Shown piece after piece: positions 10,512 through 64,000 of a DNA stretch of 64,000 bases. Each line of letters opens with the position of its first letter. Within the stretch, counting starts at the first letter, position 1. The notes under the pieces were generated by a model, which was not told where the DNA came from, searched no databases, and saw only the letters and a list, made by a program, of their open reading frames with translations. The stretch is from Macrostomum lignano (taxonomy: Eukaryota). The translations under genes were made by a program, and so were the position numbers. The stretch covers positions 1 to 64,000 of the forward strand of contig NIVC01000829.1 in NCBI GenBank assembly GCA_002269645.1. The letters are read 5' to 3'.

Positions 10512-12035
10512 ATGTCTTCTGCCAAAAAAGCAACGTCAGGAAAGCAGCAAGGCGACAACAAGCAGCAGCACGATGTTTGCAGTCTGCCTAACTGTGGCCA
10601 AGACGCTGCTGGTCAGGGCAGCCACTGGGACGGGCCCTTGTGCGCCGCCCATCTGAAGCGAGACGCCGACCGATTCCGAGAGAGCTACTACTCTTATCGT
10701 CAGGCGAACATCGATGGTGCAATGCGCCGCGTTGCCGAGCAGATGGACTTGACGCGCGGCGCTTTGTTCGAGCTGACCAGCGACCGAGCCAATGCGTCAG
10801 ACATGTTTGAAGAGATTCTCGAGATTGTCCAGCGCTGCCGCAGTACCGTCATTGGCAGGCTGGACGCCAAGATCGACAGCATGGACGCCAGTCTGAAGTC
10901 GTTGCACTTCTTTGAAAAGCTTCGAGCAGATATCAACGGGACTGAAATGTCTGGCGATCTTGTTAAAAGTTTCCAGTTGAGCAAGAAGATGCAACTCGCA
11001 CTTGAAGATGCTCCCATTTCCGATGCTTGGACTGATCCAGTTGACAGCAGCGTTGAACTGGTCCAGAAGCTGCTGCAGGAGACAAAGACTCGAGCTGCAA
11101 TTGCCGAGGATGCAGACGGGGCAGCAATGCGATCTTTGCTGGAGTCAGCTGTGCCAACTGCCAAGGTTCTTCTTACAAACTACATCCAATTCGTTTTCAA
11201 CTGCAATCGTACGGATGGATTTTTTTACTCCGCTCAGCTGGTTTCCAAGACGCAACAGAATGGCTTTCAGGCTTTGCCAAGCTCCTGCGTACTTGCAGTA
11301 GGTAACTATGGTGCGAACTGGCATATCGCTTTCTATAGCAACGAACTCGTGGTACTTAGCCAAAGAAATCAGCCATCGAACAATGTTGTATTAGTGTCTG
11401 CAGCTCTTGTGAATCACCAGCAACAAATCTATATGCTTGGTAATAACAATTCTTTGATTGTGACGGACCTAGCTGGTACACAGCTTCGAACTATTGACAA
11501 TGTCCAGTTTCAAGCTGAAATGCCGATCATAGTCAACGATATGGAGAAGCTGTACATTCTCGGTGATGGCTGCATAAACTGCCTGTCGCTGGACACTTGC
11601 GAACTTCAGGATAGCATGAAACTCTCGAAAGACACTGCGAATGTTCGTCATATGACAGTTTCTGGTCGTAGTTTAATACTGGCCACCCAGTCAGCAGTGT
11701 ATCGAATGAGTCTCGGCACGAAAAGATGCGTAAAAGTCTGGCAGAGCAATAGTCAAAATGTGCTGTGCGTTGTAGACATTGGATCTGGATTTCTGGCTGC
11801 CTGCGAAAATAATGGCAGCGTTGCACTTCTTAGCAGCAACAGACAACTGATTAAAGTGATTGATCTGGTGCCACTAGGCGTAAACTATCTCAAGACGTGT
11901 GCTAACTGTGGTGTATCGTATGTTCTGCAGTCAATTAGCTCCTGTGGCGCCAGCCGAGAATCTTCGAGCTCCTTTCTGCTGATATGCAGCTTGTCGTGCA
12001 ACCATCGCGTTTTAGTGCGAGTGTCGATCTGCTAG
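10512..12035 (+). CDS. TRIM-like protein, type A (divergent): C3H zinc-finger-like motif, coiled coil, probable beta-propeller; 507 aa, intronless
   Basis: CSLPNC-x15-CAAH motif; heptad-rich segment; repeated beta-strand units (IYMLG..SLIVTDLAGTQL, KLYIL, LILAT..AVYR); alignable along its length to the paralogues at 18335, 25636, 33260, 42270. Fold assignment is inference. Confidence 0.8.
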   Translation: MSSAKKATSGKQQGDNKQQHDVCSLPNCGQDAAGQGSHWDGPLCAAHLKRDADRFRESYYSYRQANIDGAMRRVAEQMDLTRGALFELTSDRANASDMFEEILEIVQRCRSTVIGRLDAKIDSMDASLKSLHFFEKLRADINGTEMSGDLVKSFQLSKKMQLALEDAPISDAWTDPVDSSVELVQKLLQETKTRAAIAEDADGAAMRSLLESAVPTAKVLLTNYIQFVFNCNRTDGFFYSAQLVSKTQQNGFQALPSSCVLAVGNYGANWHIAFYSNELVVLSQRNQPSNNVVLVSAALVNHQQQIYMLGNNNSLIVTDLAGTQLRTIDNVQFQAEMPIIVNDMEKLYILGDGCINCLSLDTCELQDSMKLSKDTANVRHMTVSGRSLILATQSAVYRMSLGTKRCVKVWQSNSQNVLCVVDIGSGFLAACENNGSVALLSSNRQLIKVIDLVPLGVNYLKTCANCGVSYVLQSISSCGASRESSSSFLLICSLSCNHRVLVRVSIC

Positions 12036-12479
12036 TGCTATAACCGAAACCGATTTATTTAGAAGCATATCTTTCTATTCAATACAGCACATCTTTTCCC
12101 TGTTAACGAAGTCACTCAGCTCTACTAAGACTCAAACTTTAAAGTGAGTTTTTAAAACTGAGCTACCGAGTTTTGAACTTATTCCATGATAGGGAGTGTC
12201 ATAATACATTTCTAGTTTGACGTCTTTGCTTTGTGTTGAGACAGTCGGTATACTCGTAGCTGAATGGCGGGATAAATAAAATCAATAGGAATTTCTATAG
12301 TCCATACAACTCCAGTGTTTCTATAAGCTTATAAAAACTTGCGTTGTTCACTGACTATTCAAAAGTCATGTTCCTATCAGCTTTTCTGTCAGGACCCTGT
12401 CAGGACTCTAAGTCCCTCATGACCTTGGCCACTCTACTGACTGTGCATGAGTATAAAGCTTATGCTACTTAGTATAAAC

Positions 12480-16275: not shown

Positions 16276-16544
16276 CTCTTTGTCTCCTGTCCTAGTTGGT
16301 CTAATAAACAGCTTAATCTATATGTACCCATTATAAGTTCTCTAGAGATTTTTTCTATGGCGAAGATAAGAAAAATATTATTTATAGCCCTGTCTCTACA
16401 CCCTCGATATAAAAACTGGAGAATTAATTTCATCACCTGCACATAAAATGTTCTATGGTAGAAAGTACTCGTAGAATGGTGAAGCCTTGGCCTGATGAAA
16501 ACGCATCCTCGGACTTTATTTTCCATCGAACACTTTATAAGGCG

Positions 16545-18170
16545 GGTGTGATACTACACATCGTTAAAGGTTGAGTTGCCTATTTCCATTGGCTTGGGCT
16601 CAGCCGCCTCCCCAGCCGCCGTGGTGTACGCGGCGCCCGCGGCAGGTGAGACCTGGCCGCTCTGCACCGCCTTACTCTCCAGCGACTGAAGTATGGCTGC
16701 TGCCCTCGCCTTGCGCCCCACCGTCAGGAGTCTAGACTCGGTCGGCAGCATCCTGGTGGCAATCCCACTAGTTGGATGGCCGAGCCGTGCCGTGCCATCG
16801 TCCAGTTCCTTTGGCTGGCTTTGAGCAGTTTGACGAGCGGCACGAGTCCGCTCGAGGTGAAGTCTCGGGGACTAAGCTTTGATAAGGACGCGCTGAATTA
16901 GCCCGGACCGTCGGCTTCTACGGGCAGGTCTACGTTCACCCGAGGCAGACTCAGCAGCGCGGATTGCCCTATTAGGCTCTGGGTCTGGTTGATGTTGCTT
17001 GGCCGGCGAAGCCTGAGCCCCAGCTCCCCTTGCGGTTGCAGTGCGCTTCCTGACATTCTTGACTTCCATCTTGTCCTCCTCAGCAAAGGATGATCAGTTG
17101 ATGGAGACCAAGTTGAGGGTCGAGCCATTTGGTCCGAAGATGACGGTGGCCCTGGTCGTGCCCTTGCGGACCGTGTTGTAGTATACAAGACCACTGGCGT
17201 CAGGATCCGGGTGCCGCGTGAGCAGAAGCTGCCTGGACTTAATCGCGCTGGCGTCCAGGATTCAAATCCGATGATGGATGATTTACGGCCGCTCCCTCTC
17301 CAAGGGGAAAGTCAGCTGACCCGGGTCGCTGTGCCAGCCGAACTTTTGCAGCTTATCCCGCGACCCGCAGGAGTTGGGGGCTCTCCTCGGATATGCACCA
17401 CAGGAGGATGCACCCGTTTGTCTTGGTGTACTTCGCGATGTCCACGAAGGCACCATTTAATAGGCCCTCGTCAATGGTCGACGCGATGTCGGGTTGCTCA
17501 GGCGTCAGGTCGCTGTCCCTGTCGAAAACCCTCACGTCGGGTTAAAGCTAAGAGGAGTAGCTGCCAAAGCAGCTGATCGCGGTGGGCCAGGGGCGATCGG
17601 GTCCGTTTCTTTAAGATTGGCGTTGTGGCTATAGCTGAAAAGTGGGAGGACGGCTACTCGTTACGCAAGTTGAGTACCCGAGTAGCCGACTCTCCTAAGC
17701 CAGCCGGTTTGACAAAAAAGACCGCTAGCGACCGGACTACTCCCCGGCCTTCCAGCCCATCTGCCCTGTCAACACCTTAGGCATTAGAGGGTACGTTAAG
17801 CAGTACCACGGCCGGTGGACTGGCGAGCCAGACCAGCATACCTAAGTTCGGCTAAAGCCACTGGATGGGGTAACTAGCGTTGGAGCCCAGTCTGTTCAGC
17901 AGCCCTAGGATCTGCTTTGAACACTCACGGGGACAAGTACCCCTGGATGGACTTCCGAGACAGCGTAGGGGAGTCTGCGGCTCTGAGAAGTGCTGCGGAT
18001 CTCCAACCGGCCTGTACCAGCTAAAAATAGGGATGGGCGTAAAGCATCGCCAACCTTAGCCCACAGACCTAGCTTGTCTCATACCTCACTGGTATGCTGA
18101 ATACGCCTTCGCGAGCCAATAAAGTCCAATTGCTGTATTGCCTCTGTAAGCTATCTTCCTTCTAGCCTTC
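16545..18170 (-). mobile_element. GC-rich degenerate retroelement-like segment (gag/ORF1-like reading frame plus long 5' leader)
   Basis: About 250 codons in one minus-strand frame with only two stops (SAIKSRQLLL...PKPMEIGNSTFNDV*); PMEIG resembles a gag motif; composition differs sharply from the flanks; no RT or termini identified. Confidence 0.35.
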
Positions 18171-20860: not shown

Positions 20861-21073
20861 CTCAGGGCAGCAGTTAAAAGTTTCACTCTGTCAAACTCTG
20901 GTTTTAAATTGAATCACAATAGTCAAGCTGGTGCACAGTGTAGTACGAATACTGTCGCCTACTATATTATCGGCTGCGGAGCCTATTTAAATTCCAGAAG
21001 CTGTTTCGTTGTTATTGTGCAGATGCCATTTTGTTACCGACTCCTTGGGCGCGTTTCTGTTGGTGAATATTGA
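20861..21073 (+). pseudogene. 3'-end relic of a diverged TRIM-like paralogue
   Basis: SGQQLKS(F)TLSNSGF..YIIGCGAYLNSRSCFVVIVQMPFCYRLLGRVSVG matches the family C-terminus; one frameshift in this copy. Confidence 0.8.
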
Positions 21074-24865: not shown

Positions 24866-24929
24866 GTCGCAGCATTTACTTGCACCGAGGTGCAAATAAA
24901 ATGAGTCTTACTATTAAACATGCCAATAT

Positions 24930-25330
24930 TGCTCAGCTCGGGCTAATAAGTGACAATGCTGAAGCAGCTGACCTGTTTAACGCTAATCTTGAAAGTGTGC
25001 AGCACTGCAGAGTAGGTTATGAGTAGAGTGGATTTGTAAATTCATACTGAGCATATGAGGGTCAGACAGTTTTTCTAGAAAATATTTTAGCTGAAACTAG
25101 AGTTACGGAGTCACAAAGAAATCTTGTTGGCAGCCTCCAGTCTCCAAACTAGGTTGAAGCATGAGATATCGGTTCGAGGTGCACTGGTTTTAAATAACGG
25201 GTCGATCCAGTGGACAGTAGCCTTTTTTATTGAGAGACTGCGTGAGAAACTGGAAGCACTGTCTGCTATTGCTTACCAGCTTGAATAAGTTTACACAAGT
25301 TTTAGTTTTACGAGCTACAAAACGGAACCG
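24930..25330 (+). pseudogene. Eroded coiled-coil-region relic of a TRIM-like paralogue
   Basis: AQLGLISDNAEAADLFNANLESVQHCR and VDPVDSS match family motifs (ALFELTSDRAEAADLFD; VDPVDNS); many stops. Confidence 0.7.
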
Positions 25331-25635: not shown

Positions 25636-27219
25636 ATGCAAACTGAAAGCGTCGATGCAGATACCGACGCACGGACGTGCACCATGACGCATTGCACGGA
25701 GCCGTCGTCAGGTCTTGGCAAATTCTGGAGCGGGCTACTCTGCGAGCGGCATCTCGGTAAAGATGAAAAGATTTTCGAGGAGAGATACGCCGATATAAAA
25801 TCAAAGAACACTGAACCATTATCAAAGACGAACGAGCTCTTAAAAGCAAACCGGGGAGCTCTGTTTGAACTGACCAGCGACAGAGCTGAGGCCGCTGACC
25901 TGTTTGACGCAATCTTTCAGAGATTGCAGCAGTGCAGAGAAAATGTGATGAGCAGATTGGACTCTAAAATAGACCATGTGGAGCAGAATTTGAGAGCTCT
26001 CAGTTTCATAGAAAAACTTTCTGTCGAGATCGGCGAGGAGGAAGCCAAAGGTGTTTCAACTAAAGGATTCAGGCTGCATCAAGAGGTCCAGATCTCTCTT
26101 GAGGATGCCCCGATATCAGAAGAGTTTGTCGATCCGGTAGACAACAGCGTGCACCAGGTACTGAGATTGCAACAGGCTGTTGAAACTGTGGCCGTCGAGG
26201 CTGAGGATCCTGAGGATAAGAAGCGAGAAAGTAGATTTAAGTCTGCTGTGCCCAATGTTAACGTGGCGCTTAATTTGGCCAACAATGTACGCTATCGTAT
26301 GGCTGCTGTTTGCTGCAATACTGCTGGATACTATTTCTCAGCTCAAGCAGTCACGAAGACAAACCAAAACGGATTTCAAGCTCTCCCTAGCGGAAGCACT
26401 TTTTGTGTGGCTAATAATAATAGTTTCCAGCATTGGTTTTTCTCGGTTTTTAATTCAGACATGCAAATAATCAGTCAGTGGAACGTTAATAACGACGGTG
26501 TGCAGCTAGCTGCAGGTACTCTTGTAGATCACCTTCAGCAGATATTTCTTCTTGGAACCAATCAGTCCCTATTTGTGACTGACCTGACTGGCACCCAGTT
26601 GCGAAGTGTCCAGAATGTGCAGTGCCAAGCTGCAATAAGCCTCACTTATGACAATGAGAAGCTGTACATTCTTAGCTACGGTTGTGTGAACTGCCTCTCT
26701 CTGGAGTCGCTTGAGCTGCAGCAGAGCTTGAAGCTGCCTGATCATGTGAAGGACGCTCACAGTGTAACAGCTTCAGGACGCAGCTTAATTCTGGCTACTC
26801 CATCAGCTGTGCATCGATTAAACATCGGCACCGGTGGTGTGAAGAAGCTGATGGACAGTCAAAACTTTGGTGTTGCTGTCATTGACTCTAGATTGATTGC
26901 AGTGTGCGAAACAAATGGAAATGCTGTATTTGTAAGCAGCTCAGGGCAGCGGTTGAGAAGCTTGAGTCTGTCAACCTCTGGTTTCAACTACGTGAGCTAT
27001 TGCCAAACTTGTCGATCTAGCTATATCTGCCCAAATTGTATGAGACAGAGTGCTGACAATCTGCAACAAAAATGCCGATTGTGTGGGTTCAATGTCGCTG
27101 GTAGTACCTGCGAATCTATCATCTGCGGTGATGGTTACTTTGGTTCCACAAGTTGTTTCGTTATTCTTGCGTACATGTCATGCGATCACCAACTTTTTGG
27201 CCGCGTTTCTATTGGTTAA
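25636..27219 (+). CDS. TRIM-like protein, type B paralogue B2 (527 aa) with an extra C-terminal CxxC..CxxC insert
   Basis: Full ORF; family motifs; 24-aa net insertion containing CPNC and CRLC; acceptor TTTTCTCTTTTCAG 2 nt before the ATG. Confidence 0.85.
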   Translation: MQTESVDADTDARTCTMTHCTEPSSGLGKFWSGLLCERHLGKDEKIFEERYADIKSKNTEPLSKTNELLKANRGALFELTSDRAEAADLFDAIFQRLQQCRENVMSRLDSKIDHVEQNLRALSFIEKLSVEIGEEEAKGVSTKGFRLHQEVQISLEDAPISEEFVDPVDNSVHQVLRLQQAVETVAVEAEDPEDKKRESRFKSAVPNVNVALNLANNVRYRMAAVCCNTAGYYFSAQAVTKTNQNGFQALPSGSTFCVANNNSFQHWFFSVFNSDMQIISQWNVNNDGVQLAAGTLVDHLQQIFLLGTNQSLFVTDLTGTQLRSVQNVQCQAAISLTYDNEKLYILSYGCVNCLSLESLELQQSLKLPDHVKDAHSVTASGRSLILATPSAVHRLNIGTGGVKKLMDSQNFGVAVIDSRLIAVCETNGNAVFVSSSGQRLRSLSLSTSGFNYVSYCQTCRSSYICPNCMRQSADNLQQKCRLCGFNVAGSTCESIICGDGYFGSTSCFVILAYMSCDHQLFGRVSIG

Positions 27220-30768: not shown

Positions 30769-31208
30769 ATGGCAACAAAACGTAAATCAAGCGCAACAAG
30801 CGACGAGCAGGATCGACCAGCAAGCCGACTGTGCAGCCTCAGCCACTGCCAGAGCCCGGCTTCGGGCCGCGGACACTATTGGGCCGGCCTCTGCGCTGAG
30901 CATCTGGAGAGTGACAAACATCAGTTTAAAAGTCGGTTCGCCAGCATTAAGAAGGAAACTAATTCGATACTCGCTAGTGTTTTGCAGCTCACAAACCGCG
31001 CTAAAGCTGCTTAATTCGAGCTGACGACTGACCGGGCTGAGGCGGCTGACCTGTTTGATGATGTCCTTGAAAGAGTGAATGAGTGCAGGGAGAAAGTGCT
31101 TGCTTGGTAGATTAGACTCGAATATTGCAGATATGGAGCAGATCCAGAGGTCTCTCAGCTGTGCAGAGAAACTTTCGGTTGATATCAGAAGTCAGTCAGC
31201 CCTACTAG
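30769..31208 (+). pseudogene. Type C mini-gene C1 (finger + coiled coil only), disrupted
   Basis: MATKRKSS..CSLSHC..LCAEH; premature TAA at 31012-31014 and a 4-bp duplication (CTTG) near 31100. Confidence 0.85.
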
Positions 31209-33259: not shown

Positions 33260-34753
33260 ATGGCAACTGAAAGCGTCGATGCAGAATCCGATGCACAGAC
33301 GTGCACCATGACGCATTGCACAGAGCCTTCGTCAGGTCTTGGAACATACTGGAACGGGCAACTCTGCAAGCGACATCTCGCTAAAGATGAAAAGATTTTC
33401 GCAAAGAGATACGCCGATATTAAATCAGAGAACACTGAGGTATTATCGAAAACAGATAAACTCTTGAAAGCAAACCAGGGAGCTCTGTTTGAACTGACCA
33501 GCGACAAAGCTGAGGCCGCTGATCTGTTTGACGCCATCTTTCAGAGATTGCAGCAGTGCAGAGAAAATGTGATGAGCAGATTGGACTCCAAAATAGACAA
33601 TGTGGAACGAAACTTGAAAGCTCTCAGTTTCATAGAGAAACTTTCGGTCGAGATCGGCGAGGAGGAAGCCAAAGGTGTTTCAACTAAAGGATTCAGGCTG
33701 CATCAAGAGGTCCAGATCTCGCTTGAGGATGTCCCGATATCAGAAGAGTTTGTCGATCCGGTAGACAACAGTGTGCACCAGGTACTGAGATTGCAACAAG
33801 CTGTTAGGACTTTTGCAGATGAGGCAGAGGATCCAGAGGATAAGAAACTAAAAGCTAGACTTGACTCTGCCGTGCCCACTGTAAAAATTGCGCCTAAATT
33901 GGCCAACCGTTCCTATATTCTCGCTGCTGTTTGCACCAATACTGCTGGATACTATTTCTCAGCTCAAGCAGTCACGAAGACAAAGCAAAACGGATTTGAA
34001 GCTCTCCCTAGCAGAAGCACTTTTTGTGTGGGTAATAATTCGCAGGATTGTTTTTTCAAGGTCTATAATTCAGACATGCAAATTATCAGCCAGTGGAACG
34101 TTGGTAACAACGGAGTGCAGTTAGCTTCAGGCACACTTGTTGATCATCTTCAGCAGATATTTCTTCTTGGAACCAATCAGTCCCTAATTGTGACTGACCT
34201 GACTGGCACCCAGTTGCAAAGTGTCCAGAATGTGCAGTGCCAAGCTCCAATAAGTCTCACTCATGACATGGAGAAGCTGTACATTCTCAGCAACGGTTGC
34301 GTAAACTGTCTCTCTCTGGAGTCGCTTGAGCTGCAGCAGAGCTTGACGCTGCCCGATCATGTGAAGGACGCTCGGAGTGTAGCAGTTTCAGGACGCGGCT
34401 TAATACTGTCCACCCCATCAGCTGTACACCGATTAAACATCAGCACCGGTGGTGTGAAGAAGCTGATGGACAGTCAGAACTTTTGTGTCGCTGTCATTGA
34501 CTCTGGATTGATTGCAGTGTTCGAAACTAATGGAAATGCTGTTATTGTGAGCAGCTCAGGGCAGCGGTTGAAAAGTTTCAGTCTGACAAACTCGGGTTTC
34601 AACTACGTAAACTATTGCCAAACTTGTCGACAGGGCAATTACAATACCACCTGCCAATCTATAATCTGCAGCGGTGCCTACCTAGATTCCACAAGCTGTT
34701 TCGTTCTTCTTGTGCACAGGTCATGCAGTCACCGACTCCTTTGGCGCCAGTAA
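33260..34753 (+). CDS. TRIM-like protein, type B paralogue B3 (497 aa); last 4 codons displaced by a hAT insertion
   Basis: Full ORF ending WRQ*, with the stop supplied by the TIR (CAGTAA); the original end GTTTCTATTGGTTAA (VSIG*) is at 37355-37369. Confidence 0.85.
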   Translation: MATESVDAESDAQTCTMTHCTEPSSGLGTYWNGQLCKRHLAKDEKIFAKRYADIKSENTEVLSKTDKLLKANQGALFELTSDKAEAADLFDAIFQRLQQCRENVMSRLDSKIDNVERNLKALSFIEKLSVEIGEEEAKGVSTKGFRLHQEVQISLEDVPISEEFVDPVDNSVHQVLRLQQAVRTFADEAEDPEDKKLKARLDSAVPTVKIAPKLANRSYILAAVCTNTAGYYFSAQAVTKTKQNGFEALPSRSTFCVGNNSQDCFFKVYNSDMQIISQWNVGNNGVQLASGTLVDHLQQIFLLGTNQSLIVTDLTGTQLQSVQNVQCQAPISLTHDMEKLYILSNGCVNCLSLESLELQQSLTLPDHVKDARSVAVSGRGLILSTPSAVHRLNISTGGVKKLMDSQNFCVAVIDSGLIAVFETNGNAVIVSSSGQRLKSFSLTNSGFNYVNYCQTCRQGNYNTTCQSIICSGAYLDSTSCFVLLVHRSCSHRLLWRQ

Positions 34754-41655: not shown

Positions 41656-41659
41656 TCTG

Positions 41660-42269: not shown

Positions 42270-43781
42270 ATGGAAACTGAAAGCGTCGATGCAGATACCG
42301 ATGCACGGACGTGCACCATGACGCATTGCACGGAGCCGTCGTCAGGTCTTGGCAAATTCTGGAGCGGGCAACTCTGCGAGCGGCATCTCGGTAAAGATGA
42401 AAAGATTTTCGAGGAGAGATACGCCGATATAAAATCAAAGAACACTGAACCATTAGCGAAGACGAACGAACTCCTAAAAGCAAACCGAGGAGCTCTGTTT
42501 GAACTGACCAGCGACAGAGCTGAGGCAGCTGATCTGTTTGACGCAATATTTCAGAGATTGCTGCAGTGCAGAGAAAATGTGATGAGCAGATTGGACTCTA
42601 AAATAGACAATGTGGAGCAGAACTTGAGAGCTCTCGGCTTCATAGAGAAACTTTCGGTCGAGATCGGCGAGGAGGAAGCCAAAGGTGTTTCAACTAAAGG
42701 ATTCAGGCTGCATCAAGAGGTCCAGATCTCGCTTGAGGATGCCCCGATATCAGAAGAGTTTGTCGATCCGGTAGACAACAGCGTGCACCAGGTACTGAGA
42801 TTGCAACAGGCTGTTGAGACTTTTGCAGATGAGGCTGAGGATCCTGACGGTGAGAAACTAAAAGCTAGACTTGAGTCTGCCGTGCCCACTGTTAATGTGG
42901 CTCCTAATTTGGACAACTACTGTTCCTATATTCTCGCTGCTGTTTGCACCAATACTGCTGGATACTATTTCTCAGCTCAAGCAGTCACGAAGACAAACCA
43001 AAACGGATTTCAAGCTCTCCCTAGCGGAAGCACTTTTTGTGTGGCTAATGATTGTCAGTATTGGTTTTTCATGGTCTATAATTCAGACATGCAAATTATC
43101 AGCCAGTGGAACGTTGGTAACAACGGAGTGCAGTTAGCTTCAGGCACACTTGTTGATCATCTTCAGCAGATATTTCTTCTTGGAACCAATCAGTCCCTAT
43201 TTGTGACTGACCTGACTGGCACCCAGTTGCGAAGTGTCCAGAATGTGCAGTGCGAAGCTGCAATAAGCCTCACTCATGACATGGAGAAGCTGTACATTCT
43301 TAGCTACGGTTGTGTGAACTGCCTCTCTCTGGAGTCGCTTGAGCTGCAGCAGAGCTTGACGCTGCCCGATAATGTGAAGGACGCTCACAGTGTAACAGCT
43401 TCAGGACGCAGCTTAATTCTGGCTACTCCATCAGCTGTACATCGGTTAAACATCGGCACCGGTGGTGGGAAGAAGCTGATGGACAGTCAGAACTTTTGTG
43501 TCGCTGTCATTGACTCTAGATTGATTGCAGTGTTCGAAACTAATGGAAATGCTGTTTTTGTAAGCAGCTCAGGGCAGCGGTTGAGAAGTTTCAGTCTGAC
43601 AAACTCGGGTTTCAACTACGTAAACTATTGCCAAACTTGTCGACAGGGCAATTACAATACCACCTGCCAATCTATAATCTGCAGCGGTGCCTACTTAGAT
43701 TCCACAAGCTGTTTTGTTCTTCTTGTGCACATGTCATGCGGAGACCAACTCCTTGGATGCGTTTCTTTTGGTTATGATTAA
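42270..43781 (+). CDS. TRIM-like protein, type B paralogue B4 (503 aa)
   Basis: Full ORF; family motifs; acceptor TTTTCTCTTTTCAG 2 nt before the ATG. Confidence 0.85.
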   Translation: METESVDADTDARTCTMTHCTEPSSGLGKFWSGQLCERHLGKDEKIFEERYADIKSKNTEPLAKTNELLKANRGALFELTSDRAEAADLFDAIFQRLLQCRENVMSRLDSKIDNVEQNLRALGFIEKLSVEIGEEEAKGVSTKGFRLHQEVQISLEDAPISEEFVDPVDNSVHQVLRLQQAVETFADEAEDPDGEKLKARLESAVPTVNVAPNLDNYCSYILAAVCTNTAGYYFSAQAVTKTNQNGFQALPSGSTFCVANDCQYWFFMVYNSDMQIISQWNVGNNGVQLASGTLVDHLQQIFLLGTNQSLFVTDLTGTQLRSVQNVQCEAAISLTHDMEKLYILSYGCVNCLSLESLELQQSLTLPDNVKDAHSVTASGRSLILATPSAVHRLNIGTGGGKKLMDSQNFCVAVIDSRLIAVFETNGNAVFVSSSGQRLRSFSLTNSGFNYVNYCQTCRQGNYNTTCQSIICSGAYLDSTSCFVLLVHMSCGDQLLGCVSFGYD

Positions 43782-46723: not shown

Positions 46724-47161
46724 ATGGCAACAAAACGTAAATCAAGCGCAACAAGCGACGAGCAGGATCGACCAGCAAGCCGACTGTGCAGCCTCAGCCA
46801 CTGCCAGAGCCCGGCTTCGGGCCGCGGACACTATTGGGCCGGGCCTCTCTGCGCTGAGCATCTCGAGAGTGACAAAGAGCAGTTTAAAAGTCGGTTCGCC
46901 AGCATTAAGAATGAAACCGATTCGATACTCGCTGGTGCTTCGCAGCTCACCAACCGCGCTAAAGCTGCTCAATTCGAGCTGACGACTGACCGGGCTGAGA
47001 CGGCTGACCTGTTTGAGGCTGTCATTGCAAGAGTGAATGAGTGCAGGGAGAAAGTGCTTGGTAGATTAGACTCGAATATTGCAGATATGGAGCAGATCCA
47101 GAGGTCTCTCAGCTGTGTAGAGAAACTTTCGGTTGATGTCAAAAGTCAGTCAGCCCACTAG
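46724..47161 (+). CDS. Type C mini-gene C2: finger + coiled coil only, 145 aa, intact ORF
   Basis: ATG at 46724 (codon 27 of the listed ORF); CSLSHC-x15-CAEH; ends EKLSVDVKSQSAH*; no AG acceptor immediately upstream, so expression is uncertain. Confidence 0.55.
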   Translation: MATKRKSSATSDEQDRPASRLCSLSHCQSPASGRGHYWAGPLCAEHLESDKEQFKSRFASIKNETDSILAGASQLTNRAKAAQFELTTDRAETADLFEAVIARVNECREKVLGRLDSNIADMEQIQRSLSCVEKLSVDVKSQSAH

Positions 47162-49128: not shown

Positions 49129-50640
49129 ATGACAACCGATAGCGTCGATGCAGAATCCGATGCACAGACGTGCACCATGACGCATTGCACAGAGCCTTCG
49201 TCAGGTCTTGGAATATACTAGAGCGGGCAACTCTGCGAGCGGCATCTCGCTAAAGATGAGAAGATTTTCGCAAAGAAATACGCCGATGTTAAATCAGAGA
49301 ACACTGAGGTATTATCGAAGACAGATGAACTGTTAAAAGCAAACAGGGGAGCTCTGTTTGAACTGACCAGCGACAGAGCTGAGGCCGCTGATCTGTTTGA
49401 CGCAATCTTTCAGAGATTGCAGCAGTGCAGAGAAAATGTGATGAGCAGATTGGACTCCAAAATAGACAATGTGGAGCAGAACTTGAGAGCTCTCAGTTTC
49501 ATAGAAAAACTCGCGATCGAGATCGGCGAGGAGGAAGCCAAAGGTGTTTCAACTAAAGGATTCAGGCTGCATCAAGAGGTCCAGATCTCGCTTGAGGATG
49601 CCACGATATCAGAAGAGTTTCTCGATCCGGTGGACAGCAGTGTGCAGCAGGTACTGAGATTGCAACAAGCTGTTGAGACTTTTGCAGATGAGGCTGAGGA
49701 TCCTGAGGATAAGAAACGAGAAAGTAGACTTAAGTCTGCCGTGCCCACTGTTAAGGTGGCGCCTATTTTGGCCTGCAATGTAATCTATGTTTTCGCTGCT
49801 GTTTGCTGCAACACTACTGGATACTATTTCTCAGCTCTAGCAGTCAGGAAGACAAACCAAAACGGATTTCAAGCTCTCCCTAGCGGAAGCACTTTTTGTG
49901 TGGGTAACCATAATAGTTCGTAGTATTGGTTTTTCATGGTCTGTAATTCAGACATGCAAATAATCAGTCAGTGGAACGTTGGTAACAACGGAGTGCAGCT
50001 AGCTTCAGGCACATTTGTAGATCGTCTTCAGCAGATATTTCTTCTTGGAACCAATCAGTCCCTAATTGTGACTGACCTGACTGGCACCCAGTTGCGAAGT
50101 GTCCAGAATGTGCAGTGCCAAGCTCCAATAAGCCTCACTCATGACATGGAGAAGCTGTACATTCTCAGCAACGGTTGCGTGAACTGCCTCTCTCTGGAGT
50201 CGCTTGAGCTGCAGCAGAGCTTGACGCTGCCCGATAATGTGAAGGACGCTCGCAGTGTAACAGCTTCAGGACGCAGCTTAATTCTGGCTACTCCATCAGC
50301 TGTACATCGGTTAAACATCGGCACCGGTGGTGGGAAGAAGCTGATGGACAGTCAGAACTTTGTTGTCGCTGTCATTGACTCTGGATTGATTGCAGTGTTC
50401 GAAACTAATGGAAATGCTGTTTTTGTAAGCAGCTCAGGGCAGCGGTTGAAAAGTTTCAGTCTGACAAACTCGGGTTTCAACTACGTAAACTATTGCCAAA
50501 CTTGTCGACAGGGCAATTACAATACCACCTGCCAATCTATAATCTGCAGCGGTGCCTACTTAGATTCCACAAGCTGTTTCGTTCTTCTTGTGCACTTGTC
50601 ATGCGGACACCGATTCCTTGGGCGCATTTCTATTGGTTAA
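49129..50640 (+). pseudogene. Type B paralogue B5, nonsense pseudogene
   Basis: TAG at 49219-49221 (W codon) and 49921-49923 (Q codon); upstream acceptor AG changed to TG. Confidence 0.9.
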
Positions 50641-53543: not shown

Positions 53544-53981
53544 ATGGCAACAAAACGTAAATCAAGCGCAACAAGCGACGAGCAGGATCGACCAGCAAGC
53601 CGACTGTGCAGCCTCAGCCACTGCCAGAGCCCGGCTTCGGGCCGCGGACACTATTGGGCCGGGCCTCTCTGCGCTGAGCATCTCGAGAGTGACAAAGAGC
53701 AGTTTAAAAGTCGGTTCGCCAGCATTAAGAATGAAACCGATTCGATACTCGCTGGTGCTTCGCAGCTCACCAACCGCGCTAAAGCTGCTCAATTCGAGCT
53801 GACGACTGACCGGGCTGAGACGGCTGACCTGTTTGAGGCTGTCATTGCAAGAGTGAATGAGTGCAGGGAGAAAGTGCTTGGTAGATTAGACTCGAATATT
53901 GCAGATATGGAGCAGATCCAGAGGTCTCTCAGCTGTGTAGAGAAACTTTCGGTTGATGTCAAAAGTCAGTCAGCCCACTAG
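53544..53981 (+). CDS. Type C mini-gene C3 (same translation as C2)
   Basis: Identical translation to 46724-47161. Confidence 0.55.
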   Translation: MATKRKSSATSDEQDRPASRLCSLSHCQSPASGRGHYWAGPLCAEHLESDKEQFKSRFASIKNETDSILAGASQLTNRAKAAQFELTTDRAETADLFEAVIARVNECREKVLGRLDSNIADMEQIQRSLSCVEKLSVDVKSQSAH

Positions 53982-55948: not shown

Positions 55949-57460
55949 ATGACAACCGATAGCGTCGATGCAGAATCCGATGCACAGACGTGCACCATGA
56001 CGCATTGCACAGAGCCTTCGTCAGGTCTTGGAATATACTAGAGCGGGCAACTCTGCGAGCGGCATCTCGCTAAAGATGAGAAGATTTTCGCAAAGAAATA
56101 CGCCGATGTTAAATCAGAGAACACTGAGGTATTATCGAAGACAGATGAACTGTTAAAAGCAAACAGGGGAGCTCTGTTTGAACTGACCAGCGACAGAGCT
56201 GAGGCCGCTGATCTGTTTGACGCAATCTTTCAGAGATTGCAGCAGTGCAGAGAAAATGTGATGAGCAGATTGGACTCCAAAATAGACAATGTGGAGCAGA
56301 ACTTGAGAGCTCTCAGTTTCATAGAAAAACTCGCGATCGAGATCGGCGAGGAGGAAGCCAAAGGTGTTTCAACTAAAGGATTCAGGCTGCATCAAGAGGT
56401 CCAGATCTCGCTTGAGGATGCCACGATATCAGAAGAGTTTCTCGATCCGGTGGACAGCAGTGTGCAGCAGGTACTGAGATTGCAACAAGCTGTTGAGACT
56501 TTTGCAGATGAGGCTGAGGATCCTGAGGATAAGAAACGAGAAAGTAGACTTAAGTCTGCCGTGCCCACTGTTAAGGTGGCGCCTATTTTGGCCTGCAATG
56601 TAATCTATGTTTTCGCTGCTGTTTGCTGCAACACTACTGGATACTATTTCTCAGCTCTAGCAGTCAGGAAGACAAACCAAAACGGATTTCAAGCTCTCCC
56701 TAGCGGAAGCACTTTTTGTGTGGGTAACCATAATAGTTCGTAGTATTGGTTTTTCATGGTCTGTAATTCAGACATGCAAATAATCAGTCAGTGGAACGTT
56801 GGTAACAACGGAGTGCAGCTAGCTTCAGGCACATTTGTAGATCGTCTTCAGCAGATATTTCTTCTTGGAACCAATCAGTCCCTAATTGTGACTGACCTGA
56901 CTGGCACCCAGTTGCGAAGTGTCCAGAATGTGCAGTGCCAAGCTCCAATAAGCCTCACTCATGACATGGAGAAGCTGTACATTCTCAGCAACGGTTGCGT
57001 GAACTGCCTCTCTCTGGAGTCGCTTGAGCTGCAGCAGAGCTTGACGCTGCCCGATAATGTGAAGGACGCTCGCAGTGTAACAGCTTCAGGACGCAGCTTA
57101 ATTCTGGCTACTCCATCAGCTGTACATCGGTTAAACATCGGCACCGGTGGTGGGAAGAAGCTGATGGACAGTCAGAACTTTGTTGTCGCTGTCATTGACT
57201 CTGGATTGATTGCAGTGTTCGAAACTAATGGAAATGCTGTTTTTGTAAGCAGCTCAGGGCAGCGGTTGAAAAGTTTCAGTCTGACAAACTCGGGTTTCAA
57301 CTACGTAAACTATTGCCAAACTTGTCGACAGGGCAATTACAATACCACCTGCCAATCTATAATCTGCAGCGGTGCCTACTTAGATTCCACAAGCTGTTTC
57401 GTTCTTCTTGTGCACTTGTCATGCGGACACCGATTCCTTGGGCGCATTTCTATTGGTTAA
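55949..57460 (+). pseudogene. Type B paralogue B6, nonsense pseudogene (copy of B5)
   Basis: TAG at 56039-56041 and 56741-56743; acceptor lost. Confidence 0.9.
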
Positions 57461-60368: not shown

Positions 60369-60812
60369 ATGGCAACAAAACGTAAATCAAGCGCAACAAG
60401 CGACGAGCAGGATCGACCAGCAAGCCGACTGTGCAGGTGCAGCCTCAGCCACTGCCAGAGCCTGGCTTCGGGCCGCGGACACTATTGGGACGGGCCTCTC
60501 TGCGCTGAGCATCTGGAGAGTGACAAAGAGCAGTTTAAAAGTCGGTTCGCCAGCATTAAGAAGGAAACTAATTCGATACTCGCTAGTGTTTTGCAGCTCA
60601 CAAACCGCGCTAAAGCTGCTTAATTCGAGCTGACGACTGACCGGGCTGAGGCGGCTGACCTGTTTGATGATGTCCTTGAAAGAGTGAATGAGTGCAGGGA
60701 GAAAGTGCTTGGTAGATTAGACTCGGATATTGCAGATATGGAGCAGATCCAGAGGTCTCTCAGCTGTGTAGAGAAACTTTCGGTTGATGTCAAAAGTCAG
60801 TCAGCCCACTAG
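60369..60812 (+). pseudogene. Type C mini-gene C4 with premature stop
   Basis: TAA at 60621-60623 (same site as in C1); 6-bp duplication giving RLCRCSLSHC. Confidence 0.85.
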
Positions 60813-62855
60813 TACTAAAACTTTGTAAATAGTGAAAGTTTTTTTCAACTGGGCTACCGCGTTTTGAACTTATTCGATGATAGGGAGTGTCAATACATTT
60901 CTAGTTCGATCTCTTGGCTTTGTGTTGAGACAGCCGATATAGCTGAATGGCGGTACAAATAAGATTAATAGGAATTTCTATAGTCCATACAACTTTAGTG
61001 TTTTTGTACCTTATAAAAACTTGCGTTATTCATTGGCTATTAGAAATTCATGTTCCTATCAGCTTTTCTGTCAGGACTCTAAGCCCCTCTTGACCTTGGC
61101 TACGCTACTGGCTGTGTGCATGAGTATAAACCTTAGATTCCATCTTATTTCAGCATTTCAACCTTTCTGCATAGCTCTTATGCTTTTTTAAATTGAGCTG
61201 TCCAATTTAGAACAGAAGTAGACGATTGGTGTTTGAGGTTTTTTAATATTTACAATCGTATTTTTGTTTGCTCACTCTAATTTACGATAAATCAGCTAAC
61301 CTAATGTCCGCTGCCATGTAAGTGTTACCAATGTAAAAACATACTTTTATACTGGCAATGTGGTTTTGGCATTCCTAAAATGCTACAGATTTTTCTACTT
61401 TACTACTGTCGGAAACTATTTAATGTTTATGCTATTGTTTTTACGTACCCAATTGTTGTTTAGAATTCTTTTATATGCGTATATATGCGTAGATATACGC
61501 ATATATCTATATCTATGCGTATAGATATGCATAAATACGAGTATATAGTTTTGGCCTAGAAGTCTCAAAATCCTTTATTATTTTTCTGTAAAAAATTATT
61601 GAAATAGTTATTGTCTATTTGAGCACTAAACCCAGAATTCTGAGGCTATATGACGTGTAATTTTTGTCAATTTCATATATCTCTTTCAATAACGATCTGT
61701 TAAAGTACTCAAATTAGTGATAGTCATGGGGAAAGTTTCGTTCGATTCTTGAACAATGTGCCGTTAATAGGTAACTGTCTTTTTGTCTGAAGGTTGTTGC
61801 TTTCACACTCCACAAATTTTCAACTTGTTAAATTGCCTAACCTTAACGACGCCCGTTTGAGATCGCATAACTTTATATTACCGAAAACTCACTTCCCTAA
61901 ATTTTTGCAAGCAACACTTTAATCCCGCAACTCTACATAAAGTGCACATATAGATCCTAAAAAAATCCTTGCGCGCCAGAAATTTTTATGGGTAAGCAAC
62001 AGGCTTCTGGCTGTGGATTTCGAAGTTCTATGTTAGTAAAATCTGTTAGCTCGTAATATCTGCAAAATGTGTAATTTCCAGTACTCAAATTTAGCGCCGA
62101 TCAAAGTTCGTTTTTTATAGCTAGCCTTATTATTCAAGAACTTCCACGCAATTTTGTTGTTTTTTGTTCAAGTACTCGTAAGTTTTGCAATGCTTTCGCA
62201 GTCTCGAAGGTTTTTAAGTTTGTTTTTTTAAACCACAATATAAACGGCGGATTGCGTCACAAATAAGTTTCTTATTTTTCAAACGTTTTTATCTCCATTT
62301 TTTAGTTATTTGAATATTAGTAAACATAAAGATCTTAAAGATTTAGTATATGAGCTAGGTGGATAGTTTCTATGTAAGCTCATTTTAGGTAGGTACTAGG
62401 TAACTCATTTTCACTTTCTGTGATTATTCGCATGATTATACGATATGAAAACTGTCAGGCTAATGACTTTCTAAATTTTTAGATAATTTCAATTTATAAG
62501 CATCTGATTTACTAAAACTCTCGCTGAATTTTTGTGAAATACTGAGCCCTTCTCGAGGAGCTTAAGCGTCTCAACACCGAATCAATGCTTTCCATCAAAT
62601 CATGACTAATTTTTTTGCTTTCTTAGACTCAAAAATATGTGCAACCTCAGTACCAACCGAGGCACTGACCAATGAGAGGTTCCGATGCAGTACAGCATGG
62701 TATGGTAGCAAGCTCAAGCCCTTGCATATATAGACAATTCGTTTTTTATCAACAATCACTTCTATTACAGCTTCAGCAGCGATTAGCATTTAGTATTTAT
62801 ATATATTTTTAGTATTACTCGTATGCTCAGTAGCTAATATTTTCTCTTTTATGCT

Positions 62856-64000
62856 ATGACAACCGATAGCGTCGATGCAGAATCCGATGCACAGACGTGC
62901 ACCATGACACATTGCACAGAGCCTTCGTCAGGTCTTGGAATATACTGGAGGGGGCAACTCTGCGAGCGACATCTCGCTAAAGATGAGAAGATTTTCGCAA
63001 AGAAAAACGCCGATGTTAAATCAGAGAACACTGAGGTATTATCGAAGACAGATGAACTGTTGAAAGCAAACAGGGTTGCTCTGTTTGAACTGACCAGCGA
63101 CAGAGCTGAGGCCGCTGACCTGTTTGACGCAATATTTCAGAGATTGCAGCAGTGCAGAGAAAATGTGATGAGCAGATTGGACTCTAAAATAGACAATGTG
63201 GAGCAGAATTTGAGAGCCCTCAGTTTCATAGAAAAGCTTTCTGTCGAGATCGGCGAGGAGGAAGCCAAAGGTGTTTCAACTAAAGGATTCAGGCTGCATC
63301 AAGAGGTCCAGATCTCGCTTGAAGATGCCCCGATATCAGAAGAGTTTGTCGATCCGGTAGACAACAGTGTGCACCAGGTACTGAGATTGCAACAAGCTGT
63401 TAGGACTTTTGCAGATGAGGCAGAGGATCCTGAGGATAAGAAACGAGAAAGTAGACTTAAGTCTGCCGTGCCCACTGTAAAAATGGCGCCTAATTTGTTA
63501 AACAATTTTTTGTTTATTCTCGCTGCTGTTTGCAGCAATACTGCTGGATACTATTTCTCAGCTCAAGCAGTCACGAAGACAAACCAAAACGGATTTCAAG
63601 CTCTACCTAGCGGAAGCACTTTTTGTGTGGCTAATAATTCGCAGTATTGGTTTTTCATGGTCTGTAATTCAGACATGCAAATAATCAGTCAGTGGAACCT
63701 TGGGAACAACGGAGTGCAGTTAGCTTCAGGCACACTTGTTGATCATCTTCAGCAGATATTTCTTCTTGGAACCAATCAGTTCCTAATTGTGACTGACCTG
63801 ACTGGCACCCAGTTGCGAAGTGTCCAGAATGTGCAGTGCCAAGCTCCAATAAGCCTCACTCATGACATGGAGAAGCTGTACATTCTCAGCAACGGTTGCG
63901 TGAACTGCCTCTCTCTGGAGTCACTTGAGCTGCAGCAGAGCTTGACGCTGCCTGATCATGTGAAGGACGCTCGCAGTGTAACAGCTTCCAGACACAGCTT
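62856..64000 (+). CDS. TRIM-like protein, type B paralogue B7, partial (open to the window end)
   Basis: Hand translation from ATG 62856 (MTTDSVDAES..CTMTHC-x15-CERH...) has no stop to 64000; not in the ORF track because no stop is reached; upstream acceptor lost. Confidence 0.75.
   Translation, partial: MTTDSVDAESDAQTCTMTHCTEPSSGLGIYWRGQLCERHLAKDEKIFAKKNADVKSENTEVLSKTDELLKANRVALFELTSDRAEAADLFDAIFQRLQQCRENVMSRLDSKIDNVEQNLRALSFIEKLSVEIGEEEAKGVSTKGFRLHQEVQISLEDAPISEEFVDPVDNSVHQVLRLQQAVRTFADEAEDPEDKKRESRLKSAVPTVKMAPNLLNNFLFILAAVCSNTAGYYFSAQAVTKTNQNGFQALPSGSTFCVANNSQYWFFMVCNSDMQIISQWNLGNNGVQLASGTLVDHLQQIFLLGTNQFLIVTDLTGTQLRSVQNVQCQAPISLTHDMEKLYILSNGCVNCLSLESLELQQSLTLPDHVKDARSVTASRHS

What the first reader, a model, noticed from the sequence alone, without database searches (positions are those of the whole stretch)
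10512..64000. Expanding array of an intronless zinc-finger/coiled-coil/propeller (TRIM-like) gene family in birth-and-death evolution
Seen: more than 53 kb of same-strand paralogues. Six long ORFs (10512, 18335, 25636, 33260, 42270, 62856), two nonsense copies, four truncated mini-genes and several relics recur in a module of type A/C gene, spacer, type B gene. Established: B-box/coiled-coil/propeller TRIM-like proteins form lineage-specific innate-immune expansions in invertebrates. Inference: this is a rapidly evolving, probably uncharacterised recognition/restriction family; I cannot match it to a named gene.
Basis: partly seen in the sequence, partly recalled or inferred. Interest (0 to 1): 0.8.

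Follow-up and report, generated by a model that had tools for sequence, protein, structure and literature searches.

The report
Flatworm RING-less TRIM-NHL-like gene array
A 53-kb stretch of the flatworm Macrostomum lignano genome is a tandem array of live, truncated and dead copies of an unnamed gene that proves to be a stripped-down, fast-diversifying relative of TRIM-NHL proteins, and is one cluster of a superfamily of well over a hundred genes seen so far almost only in this species, with unknown targets.

Summary
The window is Macrostomum lignano contig C829.

Each ~500-aa protein has four parts:
- an N-terminal Cys-x4-Cys-x15-17-Cys-x2-His knuckle;
- a ~170-residue helical coiled-coil region;
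- a beta-propeller, in an AlphaFold2 model with pLDDT 82;
- a Cys-rich tail.

Pfam and PDB sequence searches miss the window proteins. Profile comparisons link them (E 1.6e-28) to paralogues whose last blades match the NHL domains of Thin/TRIM32, TRIM71, TRIM2/3 and Brat (E 1e-16 to 2e-7). They also link them (E 3e-19) to paralogues with a C3HC4 RING in front of the same knuckle. So this is a RING-less TRIM-NHL derivative. No B-box was detected.

The superfamily has well over 100 intron-free loci in tandem clusters. Every database relative is M. lignano except one metagenome contig.

The array evolves by unequal crossing-over, deletion and nonsense decay, and three homologous contigs carry 7, 5 and 4 C-type copies. 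The coiled coil is constrained (pN/pS 0.16). A patch at the coiled-coil/propeller junction is hypervariable.

Function, including any immune role, is untested. I rate this a new variant of a known kind, of moderate interest.

The parts
10512..12035 (+). A-type gene, 507 aa, intact. It is the oldest lineage in the array, ~43% identical to the C copies.
   Evidence: near-identical copies on contigs C293, C254 and C1178
14837..14994 (+). Relic of a C-gene 5' end: ~60 nt upstream sequence plus the first 32 codons. It is used as the first coding exon of the GenBank model BOX15_Mlig022369g2.
16560..18120 (.). Dispersed repeat (transposable-element fragment) lying between the relic and the 18335 gene, inside that gene model's 5' intron.
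   Evidence: 704 first-look candidates genome-wide, 74-84% identity
18335..19846 (+). C1 gene, 503 aa, intact. It was the target of the structure prediction.
   Evidence: (100% identical to BOX15_Mlig022369g2)
20873..21064 (+). Relic of a C-terminal ~64 aa of a family member.
24880..25140 (+). Weak relic of the coiled-coil region (35% identity to A residues 71-155).
   Evidence: E 3e-4
25636..27219 (+). C2 gene, 527 aa, intact, with a 24-aa insertion that carries two extra CxxC pairs in the Cys-rich tail.
30769..31201 (+). Truncated B-type mini-gene 1 (knuckle plus start of the coiled coil), broken by a frameshift and a stop.
33260..34753 (+). C3 gene, 497 aa, open frame, C-terminus 6 aa short. 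Its counterpart on contig C293 carries a TAA.
35630..36592 (+). ORF with a hAT transposase C-terminal dimerisation domain. This transposon remnant makes the unit 9 kb long.
   Evidence: PF05699, E 2.2e-6, above the curated cut-off
38417..38620 (+). Second relic of a C-terminal ~68 aa.
42270..43781 (+). C4 gene, 503 aa, intact.
46724..47161 (+). Truncated B-type mini-gene 2, an open 145-aa frame.
49129..50640 (+). Pseudogene copy psi5: full length, with TAG at codon 48 (Trp) and TAG at 49921-49923, and with the 5' splice-acceptor AG lost.
53544..53981 (+). Truncated B-type mini-gene 3, an open 145-aa frame identical to mini-gene 2.
55949..57460 (+). Pseudogene copy psi6, identical in coding sequence to psi5. 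It arose by a very recent unequal crossover.
60369..60806 (+). Truncated B-type mini-gene 4, with one TAA.
62856..64000 (+). C7 gene, cut by the window end (502 aa, ends at C829:64358). The frame is open but the 5' acceptor AG is lost.

Best explanation
The region is one tandem cluster of a superfamily found so far almost only in Macrostomum lignano. The superfamily consists of TRIM-NHL-derived genes that have lost the RING and carry only a single CCCH zinc knuckle where TRIM proteins have B-boxes. Each live gene encodes a cytosolic ~500-aa protein with no signal peptide. Shown or predicted here: a zinc knuckle (residues ~15-39); one very long helix (37-138) followed by shorter helices that fold back (141-205), as in TRIM coiled coils; a beta-propeller of about six blades (208-502) whose last blade carries a conserved CxxC...C...CxH cluster. 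Inferred mechanism: the coiled coil forms an antiparallel dimer that presents two propellers as ligand-binding heads. Without a RING the protein cannot itself act as an E3 ligase. It would therefore act either as a stoichiometric binder or repressor, like RING-less Brat, or by pairing through the conserved coiled coil with RING-bearing paralogues. Specificity would be set by a hypervariable patch at the coiled-coil/propeller junction and first blade (residues ~196-270), and perhaps by the variable tail. The array grows and decays by unequal crossing-over of ~7-kb units, internal deletions, transposon insertion and nonsense mutation. This gives different copy numbers on homologous contigs. The ligand class (protein, RNA, or non-self versus self) is not known. 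My working guess is a variable, conflict-type target.
For: Organism and lack of a name: a 100% match to an M. lignano hypothetical protein. Fold: AlphaFold2 with an 18-sequence family alignment gives pLDDT 81.8 and pTM 0.67, with helices 37-205 and about 25 strands from 208 to 502. Foldseek returns 1150 PDB matches at E<=0.001; the listed top 50 are beta-propeller proteins, and the top ones are COP1 chains (E 1.8e-10). TRIM-NHL link: the window-clade profile matches the distant-clade profile by hhalign with probability 99.8%, E 1.6e-28, over 424 columns. The distant-clade profile matches the NHL domains of Thin (1.1e-16), TRIM71 (5e-12), TRIM2 (1.5e-10), TRIM3 (7e-9) and Brat (2e-7) (the mixed profile gives the same). 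RING ancestry: paralogues at C1050, C509/C508, and C3594/C390/C257 have a C3HC4 RING, then the same knuckle, coiled coil and beta-rich domain in one ORF. Pfam RING models hit at 8.5e-6 to 5e-4, and precomputed RING families are on record for one of them. hhalign of the window clade against this clade gives 99.2%, E 3.2e-19, starting just after the RING. Family size and distribution: 85 and 90 scored matches from 206 and 403 candidates in two genome searches, mostly ~500-550-aa open frames in tandem clusters. Only 17 representatives were found among 1.8 billion, and all those looked up are M. lignano. Selection: across three independent pairs, pN/pS is 0.16 in the coiled-coil core (p 9e-13), 0.43 in blades 2-5 (p 8e-5) and 1.09 in residues 196-270. 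My own M1a/M2a test gives 2dlnL 30.4 (p 3e-7), with sites 201, 217, 220, 221 and 229 in a class with omega 4.9. Propeller net charge ranges from -4 to +9 among copies. Dynamics; C-type copy numbers are 7, 5 and 4 on contigs C829, C293 and C254. Transcription: the GenBank models come from a genome-guided RNA-seq assembly that excludes repeats, and they exist for A, C and D-type copies.
Against: The window proteins themselves hit no Pfam family above threshold and nothing in PDB by sequence, so the NHL assignment is transitive. The NHL signal in the distant clade is confined to the last two blades. In the window clade those blades have diverged and are partly replaced by the Cys-rich tail: the hhalign match stops at residue 443. 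Foldseek's listed top hits are WD40-type, BamB and other propellers, not NHL, and TM-scores are low (0.27-0.39 normalised to the query) because the query includes the long helices. The blade count comes from secondary structure only. No B-box was detected, and the knuckle-only profile finds nothing in PDB. Dimerisation, zinc binding and any ligand are inferred, not shown. 42% of codons fit omega = 1, so much of the protein is weakly constrained. The site test can be inflated by gene conversion among paralogues and by indel-adjacent alignment in the hypervariable patch. I found no expression data by tissue or condition.
Confidence: 0.75

Rival explanations
1. Same protein family, but its job is endogenous post-transcriptional control, for example in the germline or stem cells. 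It would bind mRNAs through the propeller as Brat, LIN-41/TRIM71 and Mei-P26 do. The many copies would then reflect dosage or sub-functionalisation after the recent genome duplication, not an arms race.
For: The only detectable named relatives are TRIM-NHL proteins, several of which are known RNA binders (their function is from my own knowledge). One copy (C1) has a strongly basic propeller, net +9. M. lignano carries large recent duplications.
Against: Propeller charge is not conserved (-4 to +9), whereas RNA-binding NHL surfaces are conserved and basic. There is a hypervariable patch, pseudogenes, and copy-number differences between homologous contigs. No orthologue is detectable outside the species in 15 billion proteins, apart from one metagenome contig. 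This pattern is unusual for core regulators.
Confidence: 0.25
2. The array is functionless: neutrally decaying segmental duplicates whose open frames survive only because the duplications are young.
For: Two of seven C copies are dead, and all four mini-genes are deletion products. 42% of codons fit omega = 1. Three copies have lost the 5' acceptor AG.
Against: Strong purifying selection acts on the coiled coil and most blades at dS 0.1-0.25. The old lineages A, B, C and D (40-47% identity) all keep ~500-codon frames. More than 100 distant paralogues also keep full frames. RNA-seq-derived gene models exist.
Confidence: 0.05
3. The gene is carried by, or captured within, a transposable element, and its copy number reflects transposition.
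For: The spacers contain transposon debris: a hAT fragment at 35630-36592, a dispersed repeat at 16.5-18.1 kb, and 290-bp inverted repeats at 44044/46202.
Against: No member matches a transposase, integrase, reverse transcriptase or other transposon domain above threshold in the Pfam scans. Copies are head-to-tail in local clusters with shared spacers, not dispersed. The transposon fragments are present in single units only. The GenBank annotation excluded repeat-overlapping transcripts yet kept these genes.
Confidence: 0.03
4. The repeated units, especially the two identical nonsense copies, are an assembly artefact of the redundant DV1 assembly.
For: The assembly is known to be redundant, with 180 Mb in blocks at >=95% identity. 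psi5 and psi6 are identical in coding sequence.
Against: The two units are 100% identical for 3.65 kb and then differ by 72 substitutions and 14 indels over 3.1 kb. That is a crossover mosaic, not a duplicated read pile. The other units differ by 6-20%. The same array exists, with different unit content, on two further contigs.
Confidence: 0.05

Closest known systems
TRIM-NHL proteins (TRIM2, TRIM3, TRIM32/Thin, TRIM71/LIN-41)
   Same: The order of parts is the same: N-terminal zinc module, long coiled coil with fold-back helices, C-terminal ~6-bladed propeller. Paralogues in the same superfamily match these NHL domains (E 1e-16 to 7e-9) and carry a C3HC4 RING.
   Different: The window copies have no RING and no detectable B-box, only a four-ligand CCCH knuckle. 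Their NHL signature is eroded beyond direct detection. They have a Cys-rich insertion or tail in the last blade. Coding is intron-free, the genes are tandemly amplified to well over 100 loci, and they are seen almost only in one species.
Brat (Drosophila brain tumor)
   Same: Brat is a RING-less member of the TRIM-NHL group that works without E3 activity by binding through its NHL propeller (function from my own knowledge). Its NHL domain is hit by the superfamily profile (2e-7).
   Different: Brat keeps two B-boxes, is a single conserved gene, and has a conserved basic RNA-binding surface. Here the propeller charge varies from -4 to +9 between copies.
COP1 (RING, coiled coil, WD40 propeller)
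   Same: It is the best Foldseek match to the whole model, helices included (E 1.8e-10, 605 aligned columns). The overall design is the same: a coiled-coil dimeriser plus a propeller.
   Different: COP1 has a seven-bladed WD40 propeller and a RING. There is no sequence relationship, and TM-scores are low (0.35).
Species-specific TRIM expansions with hypervariable recognition loops (primate TRIM5/TRIM22, fish finTRIM; invertebrate TRIM expansions such as in Enchytraeus crypticus)
   Same: Shared features are tandem birth-and-death, pseudogenes, a conserved coiled coil and a small fast-evolving patch in the recognition domain. TRIM expansion in an annelid is reported as immune-related in PMC8460440. 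TRIM5 and finTRIM are cited from my own knowledge.
   Different: Those families use B30.2/SPRY heads and keep the RING and B-box. Here the head is an NHL-derived propeller, the RING is lost, and no link to infection has been tested.

Membership tests
TRIM / RBCC (tripartite motif) | N-terminal RING finger | tested here: not met
   Pfam finds no RING in any window ORF, and tblastn with a paralogue's RING finds nothing in the window. A RING is present in paralogues elsewhere in the genome.
TRIM / RBCC (tripartite motif) | One or two B-box zinc fingers (7-8 ligands, two zinc sites) between the RING and the coiled coil | tested here: not met
   zf-B_box is not reported at E<=1 for the window proteins (HMMER's filters drop most matches above ~0.1), nor at E<=0.1 or E<=1 for the paralogues. 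Only C-x4-C-x15-17-C-x2-H is conserved. The knuckle-only profile finds nothing in PDB. A TRIM3 B-box/coiled-coil chain appears only at E 0.34.
TRIM / RBCC (tripartite motif) | Long antiparallel coiled coil directly after the zinc module | tested here: inconclusive
   AlphaFold2 predicts helix 37-138 plus helices 141-205 at pLDDT ~80-90. This region is the most constrained part of the protein (pN/pS 0.16). Dimer formation and its antiparallel geometry were not modelled.
NHL-repeat beta-propeller | Closed six-bladed propeller | tested here: inconclusive
   The propeller fold is supported. Six blades with an N-terminal closing strand are inferred from the strand count only. No coordinates were available to me, and Foldseek's listed top hits are 7-8-bladed propellers.
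NHL-repeat beta-propeller | NHL repeat sequence signature (Pfam PF01436 or a match to solved NHL domains) | tested here: inconclusive
   Window clade alone: no hit. Distant clade: significant matches to Thin, TRIM71, TRIM2, TRIM3 and Brat NHL domains, with Pfam NHL below its cut-off in 3 of 11 members. The two clades are homologous over residues 9-443.
Transposon-encoded protein | Transposase, integrase or reverse-transcriptase domain, or element termini around single gene copies | tested here: not met
   No such domain was found in family proteins. Copies lie in head-to-tail clusters. The hAT and dispersed-repeat pieces are separate insertions.

The most novel reading that the evidence does not exclude
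The superfamily of well over 100 intron-free genes, with or without a RING, each with a knuckle, coiled coil and propeller, is a flatworm-specific intracellular recognition repertoire. It would be a germline-encoded, rapidly turning-over set of dimeric propeller receptors. RING-less members such as those in this array would provide variable heads that pair with RING-bearing paralogues to target viruses, transposons or foreign or mating-partner molecules. This would be an innate-defence or conflict system of a type not described in Platyhelminthes.
Probability: 0.2. Interest if true: 0.7.

Novelty: new variant of a known kind. Interest (0 to 1): 0.45.

Why it matters
Platyhelminth innate immunity and genome defence are poorly mapped. 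M. lignano is a transgenic, RNAi-tractable model. These genes are annotated only as hypothetical proteins with no Pfam domain, so they are invisible to domain-based surveys. Recognising them as a very large, fast-evolving, RING-less branch of the TRIM-NHL lineage gives three things:
- a concrete candidate repertoire to test for roles in defence, transposon control or reproductive conflict;
- an example of how far a TRIM scaffold can be stripped (no RING, B-box reduced to one knuckle, NHL signature erased) while the coiled coil stays under strong constraint;
- a clean natural example of array dynamics, with the crossover breakpoint, deletion derivatives and differential decay on homologous contigs all visible.

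If it is only a species-specific expansion of regulators, it is still a useful annotation correction for more than a hundred gene models.

Tried and rejected
- Direct Pfam and PDB sequence searches with the window proteins gave only sub-threshold noise.
- AlphaFold2 with the shallow 8-sequence alignment gave an unusable model (pLDDT 48). Only the broader 18-sequence alignment worked.
- N-terminal profiles, meant to test B-box identity, returned generic coiled-coil proteins (apolipoproteins and the like) and TRIM3 at a non-significant E of 0.34. The knuckle-only profile returned nothing.
- All three word-indexed homologue searches and the exhaustive HMMER search found only M. lignano proteins plus one JGI metagenome contig, so no named orthologue could be used.
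- Literature and supplement look-ups for the gene IDs (Mlig022369, Mlig017959, Mlig017407 and others), and for Macrostomum with NHL or TRIM, found nothing.
- A search for invertebrate TRIM-NHL expansions gave only a general TRIM expansion in an annelid.
- The genome search does not accept an alignment as query.
Copy numbers on those contigs therefore rest on the tblastn-type table.
- I considered and rejected a transposon-borne gene, an assembly artefact and a purely neutral pseudogene array (see the rival explanations).

Full report
**What is in the sequence**

Under the standard code the window has + strand ORFs at 10512 (507 aa), 18335 (503), 25636 (527), 33260 (497), 42270 (503) and 62856 (open to the window end). 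tblastn with two of these proteins adds the following:
- two further full-length copies at 49129 and 55949, each interrupted by the same two TAG codons;
- four N-terminal ~140-aa copies at 30769, 46724, 53544 and 60369;
- short relics at 14898, 20873, 24880 and 38417.

Repeat analysis finds seven units spaced 6.8-9.0 kb apart at 77-100% identity. Nothing comparable lies on the minus strand.

**Where it comes from**

The 18335 protein is 100% identical to "hypothetical protein BOX15_Mlig022369g2" of the free-living flatworm Macrostomum lignano. The window is contig C829:1-64000 of the 764-Mb assembly. That figure matches the Mlig_3_7 assembly of the DV1 line described in PMC5730564.

According to that paper, the GenBank gene models were derived from a genome-guided RNA-seq transcriptome with repeat-overlapping transcripts removed. 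The existence of models for A-, C- and D-type copies is therefore indirect evidence of transcription. I could not find tissue or condition data.

**Protein anatomy**

All members share C-x4-C-x15-17-C-x2-H near the N-terminus. They have no signal peptide.

- With only the close paralogues as alignment, AlphaFold2 failed (pLDDT 48).
- With 18 sequences spanning the superfamily it gave pLDDT 81.8 and pTM 0.67. The model has a small beta knuckle (13-35), one helix from 37 to 138, three or four shorter helices to 205, and then about 25 strands to residue 502.
- I read the strands as six four-stranded blades closed by the strand at 208-214. This is an inference from secondary structure only.
- Foldseek against the PDB returns 1150 hits at E<=0.001; the listed top 50 are beta-propeller proteins. 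COP1 (RING, coiled coil, WD40) comes first and aligns over the helices as well.
- The tail holds a conserved CxxC...C...CxH cluster. One copy (25636) has gained 24 residues with two more CxxC pairs.

**What family it is**

The window proteins hit no Pfam family above threshold and nothing in PDB by sequence. The genome, however, holds many distant paralogues. The link to a named family runs through them in three steps:
- A profile of one such clade matches the NHL domains of Thin/TRIM32 (1.1e-16), TRIM71 (5e-12), TRIM2 (1.5e-10), TRIM3 (7e-9) and Brat (2e-7).
- That clade is homologous to the window clade over 424 columns, from the knuckle to blade 5 (hhalign 99.8%, E 1.6e-28).
- Other paralogues (C1050; C509/C508; C3594/C390/C257) have, in the same uninterrupted ORF, a C3HC4 RING followed by the same knuckle, coiled coil and beta domain. 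Pfam RING models hit at 8.5e-6 to 5e-4, precomputed RING families are on record for one, and hhalign to the window clade gives E 3.2e-19 starting just after the RING.

The superfamily is therefore RING, knuckle, coiled coil, NHL-type propeller: a TRIM-NHL derivative. The window clade is a branch that has lost the RING.

A B-box could not be shown. No zf-B_box hit appears in any Pfam scan, the knuckle profile finds nothing in PDB, and TRIM3's B-box/coiled-coil chain appears only at E 0.34. The knuckle sits where the B-box would be and may be its remnant, but that is conjecture.

**Size and distribution of the superfamily**

Two genome searches with members of different clades scored 85 and 90 matches out of 206 and 403 first-look candidates. 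They overlapped only partly. Most matches are ~500-550-aa open frames arranged in local tandem clusters. The assembly is partly redundant, so the number of distinct loci is lower, but it is still well over one hundred.

An exhaustive HMMER search of 1.8 billion cluster representatives found 17 proteins, and all those looked up are M. lignano. The word-indexed searches gave the same result, apart from one 1.9-kb JGI metagenome contig. No paper in the library links Macrostomum with NHL or TRIM or mentions these gene IDs.

**How the array evolves**

A maximum-likelihood tree separates four old lineages: A at 10512, B at C829:66927, D at C829:71268, and C. The seven C copies are a recent radiation (dS 0-0.27). 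Several events can be read directly:
- The mini-genes are the first 435 nt of the B gene at 93-95% identity. A ~1.65-kb deletion removed the rest before the [C + truncated B] unit was amplified four times.
- Units 49038-55857 and 55858-62766 are 100% identical for 3.65 kb and then differ by 72 substitutions and 14 indels. This is a crossover mosaic, so psi6 arose from psi5 by very recent unequal exchange and is not an assembly error.
- One unit is lengthened by a hAT remnant. A dispersed repeat sits between the 5' relic at 14.9 kb and the 18335 gene.
- Homologous arrays on contigs C293 and C254 carry 5 and 4 C-type copies against 7 here, and different members are broken on each.
- A branch-point/polypyrimidine/AG acceptor lies 2 nt before the ATG of C1-C4. 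The AG is mutated in psi5, psi6 and C7.
- The GenBank model of the 18335 gene starts in the relic and splices across 3.3 kb. "Intronless" therefore applies to the coding sequence only.

**Selection**

Pairwise dN/dS among C copies is 0.36-0.63, apart from the near-identical psi5 or psi6 versus C254_149092 pair (1.28). It is very uneven along the protein. Values from three phylogenetically independent pairs:

| Region (residues) | pN/pS | p against neutrality |
|---|---|---|
| Coiled-coil core (41-165) | 0.16 | 9e-13 |
| 196-270 (junction and first blade) | 1.09 | not significant |
| 271-445 (blades 2-5) | 0.43 | 8e-5 |
| Tail (446-503) | 0.74 | not significant |

The contrast between the 196-270 patch and the coiled-coil core is significant (Fisher p 7.5e-8).

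I also ran my own M1a/M2a implementation on 11 intact C copies. It gives 2dlnL = 30.4 (p 3e-7), with 2.8% of sites at omega 4.9. The sites are 201, 217, 220, 221 and 229, in the loop between the closing strand and blade 1.

Caveats: gene conversion among paralogues and indel-adjacent alignment can inflate this test. 42% of sites fit omega = 1. The two optimiser starts differed by 3.7 log-likelihood units. psi5 compared with its intact counterpart on C254 has dN/dS 1.28. Propeller net charge ranges from -4 to +9 among copies.

**Most likely mechanism**

Shown or predicted: the domain order, the propeller fold, constraint on the coiled coil, and a hypervariable patch.

Inferred: the proteins dimerise through the coiled coil, as TRIMs do, and present two propellers as binding heads. 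Lacking a RING, they act either as E3-independent binders, as Brat does, or as variable partners of the RING-bearing paralogues. The fast-evolving patch and the changing surface charge suggest a variable ligand rather than a conserved RNA motif. An endogenous RNA-regulatory role remains a serious rival. A defence or conflict role is plausible but untested.

**Verdict**

The finding is real. It is correctly described as a TRIM-like zinc-finger/coiled-coil/propeller family in birth-and-death evolution. Three corrections apply: there is no RING in these copies, no demonstrable B-box, and the immune function is only a hypothesis. Lineage-specific TRIM expansions are well known, so this is a new variant of a known kind. 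What is new is the degree of reduction, the NHL-derived head, the size of the family in one flatworm, and the fact that it is invisible to domain annotation.

Noticed in passing
window 2755-3846: A 29-bp minisatellite of about 38 copies at 92% match (consensus TTCCAGGTAAACTCAAACAGGTGTCTCTT). It produces spurious repetitive ORFs on both strands.
   Followed up: partly
window 4164-6488 (+), and the GC-rich stretch near 8371-8658: Upstream of the array lies what looks like a conserved single-copy gene. An exon at 5949-6488 matches the AKAP-17A-like RNA-binding domain (PF25015, E 3e-13). A downstream Arg/Ser-rich region fits that gene's RS-like tail.
   Followed up: partly
window 9554-9623 (-): A tRNA-like sequence just above Rfam's gathering score (33.8 bits against 29). 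Its anticodon was not examined.
   Followed up: no
window 16560-18120: A GC-rich dispersed repeat (704 first-look candidates in the genome, 74-84% identity). It sits inside the 3.3-kb 5' intron of the GenBank model of the 18335 gene. The flanking 15500-18200 is 100% identical on contig C293.
   Followed up: partly
window 18273-18334, 25574-25635, 33198-33259, 42208-42269, 49067-49128, 55887-55948, 62794-62855: A conserved 'tactagctaat...ttttctcttttcag|ct ATG' motif (branch point, polypyrimidine tract, AG) ends 2 nt before the start codon of C1-C4. It suggests cis- or spliced-leader trans-splicing. The AG is changed to TG in psi5, psi6 and in the still-open C7.
   Followed up: partly
window 44044-44332 and 46202-46480 (repeated at 50903-51048/53025-53303 and 57723-57868/59847-60125): Inverted ~290-bp repeats (82% identity) bracket ~1.9 kb of spacer in each of the younger units. 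This may be a MITE-like or foldback element that was amplified along with the unit.
   Followed up: no
window 20625-20912 and 38179-38463: The first 70 residues listed for these two 94-95-aa ORFs are identical. Each lies immediately upstream of, and overlaps, one of the two C-terminal relics. The relic module was therefore itself duplicated with units 1 and 3.
   Followed up: no
L043 (JGI metagenome 3300040775, contig Ga0450778_159907, 1913 bp), gene 479-1735: This is the only non-M. lignano relative found: a 418-aa protein 34% identical to a distant-clade member. It presumably comes from an environmental flatworm and shows the superfamily is not confined to the laboratory line.
   Followed up: partly
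G000:C509:169578.., C508:140396.. and 143861.. (L046-L049): RING-bearing superfamily members with 700-1047-aa open frames. Their C-terminal part is a long run of Ala/Thr/Ser-rich 'TAATFSFAPA' repeats, a low-complexity extension absent from the window clade.
   Followed up: no
G000:C3278:91709-93130 (L040): One distant-clade copy ends in an unrelated C-terminal segment with a CxxC...H...C motif (…APCPDCGRMLARTNMARHRKTCQ) in place of the last blade. This suggests exon or tail swapping within the superfamily.
   Followed up: no
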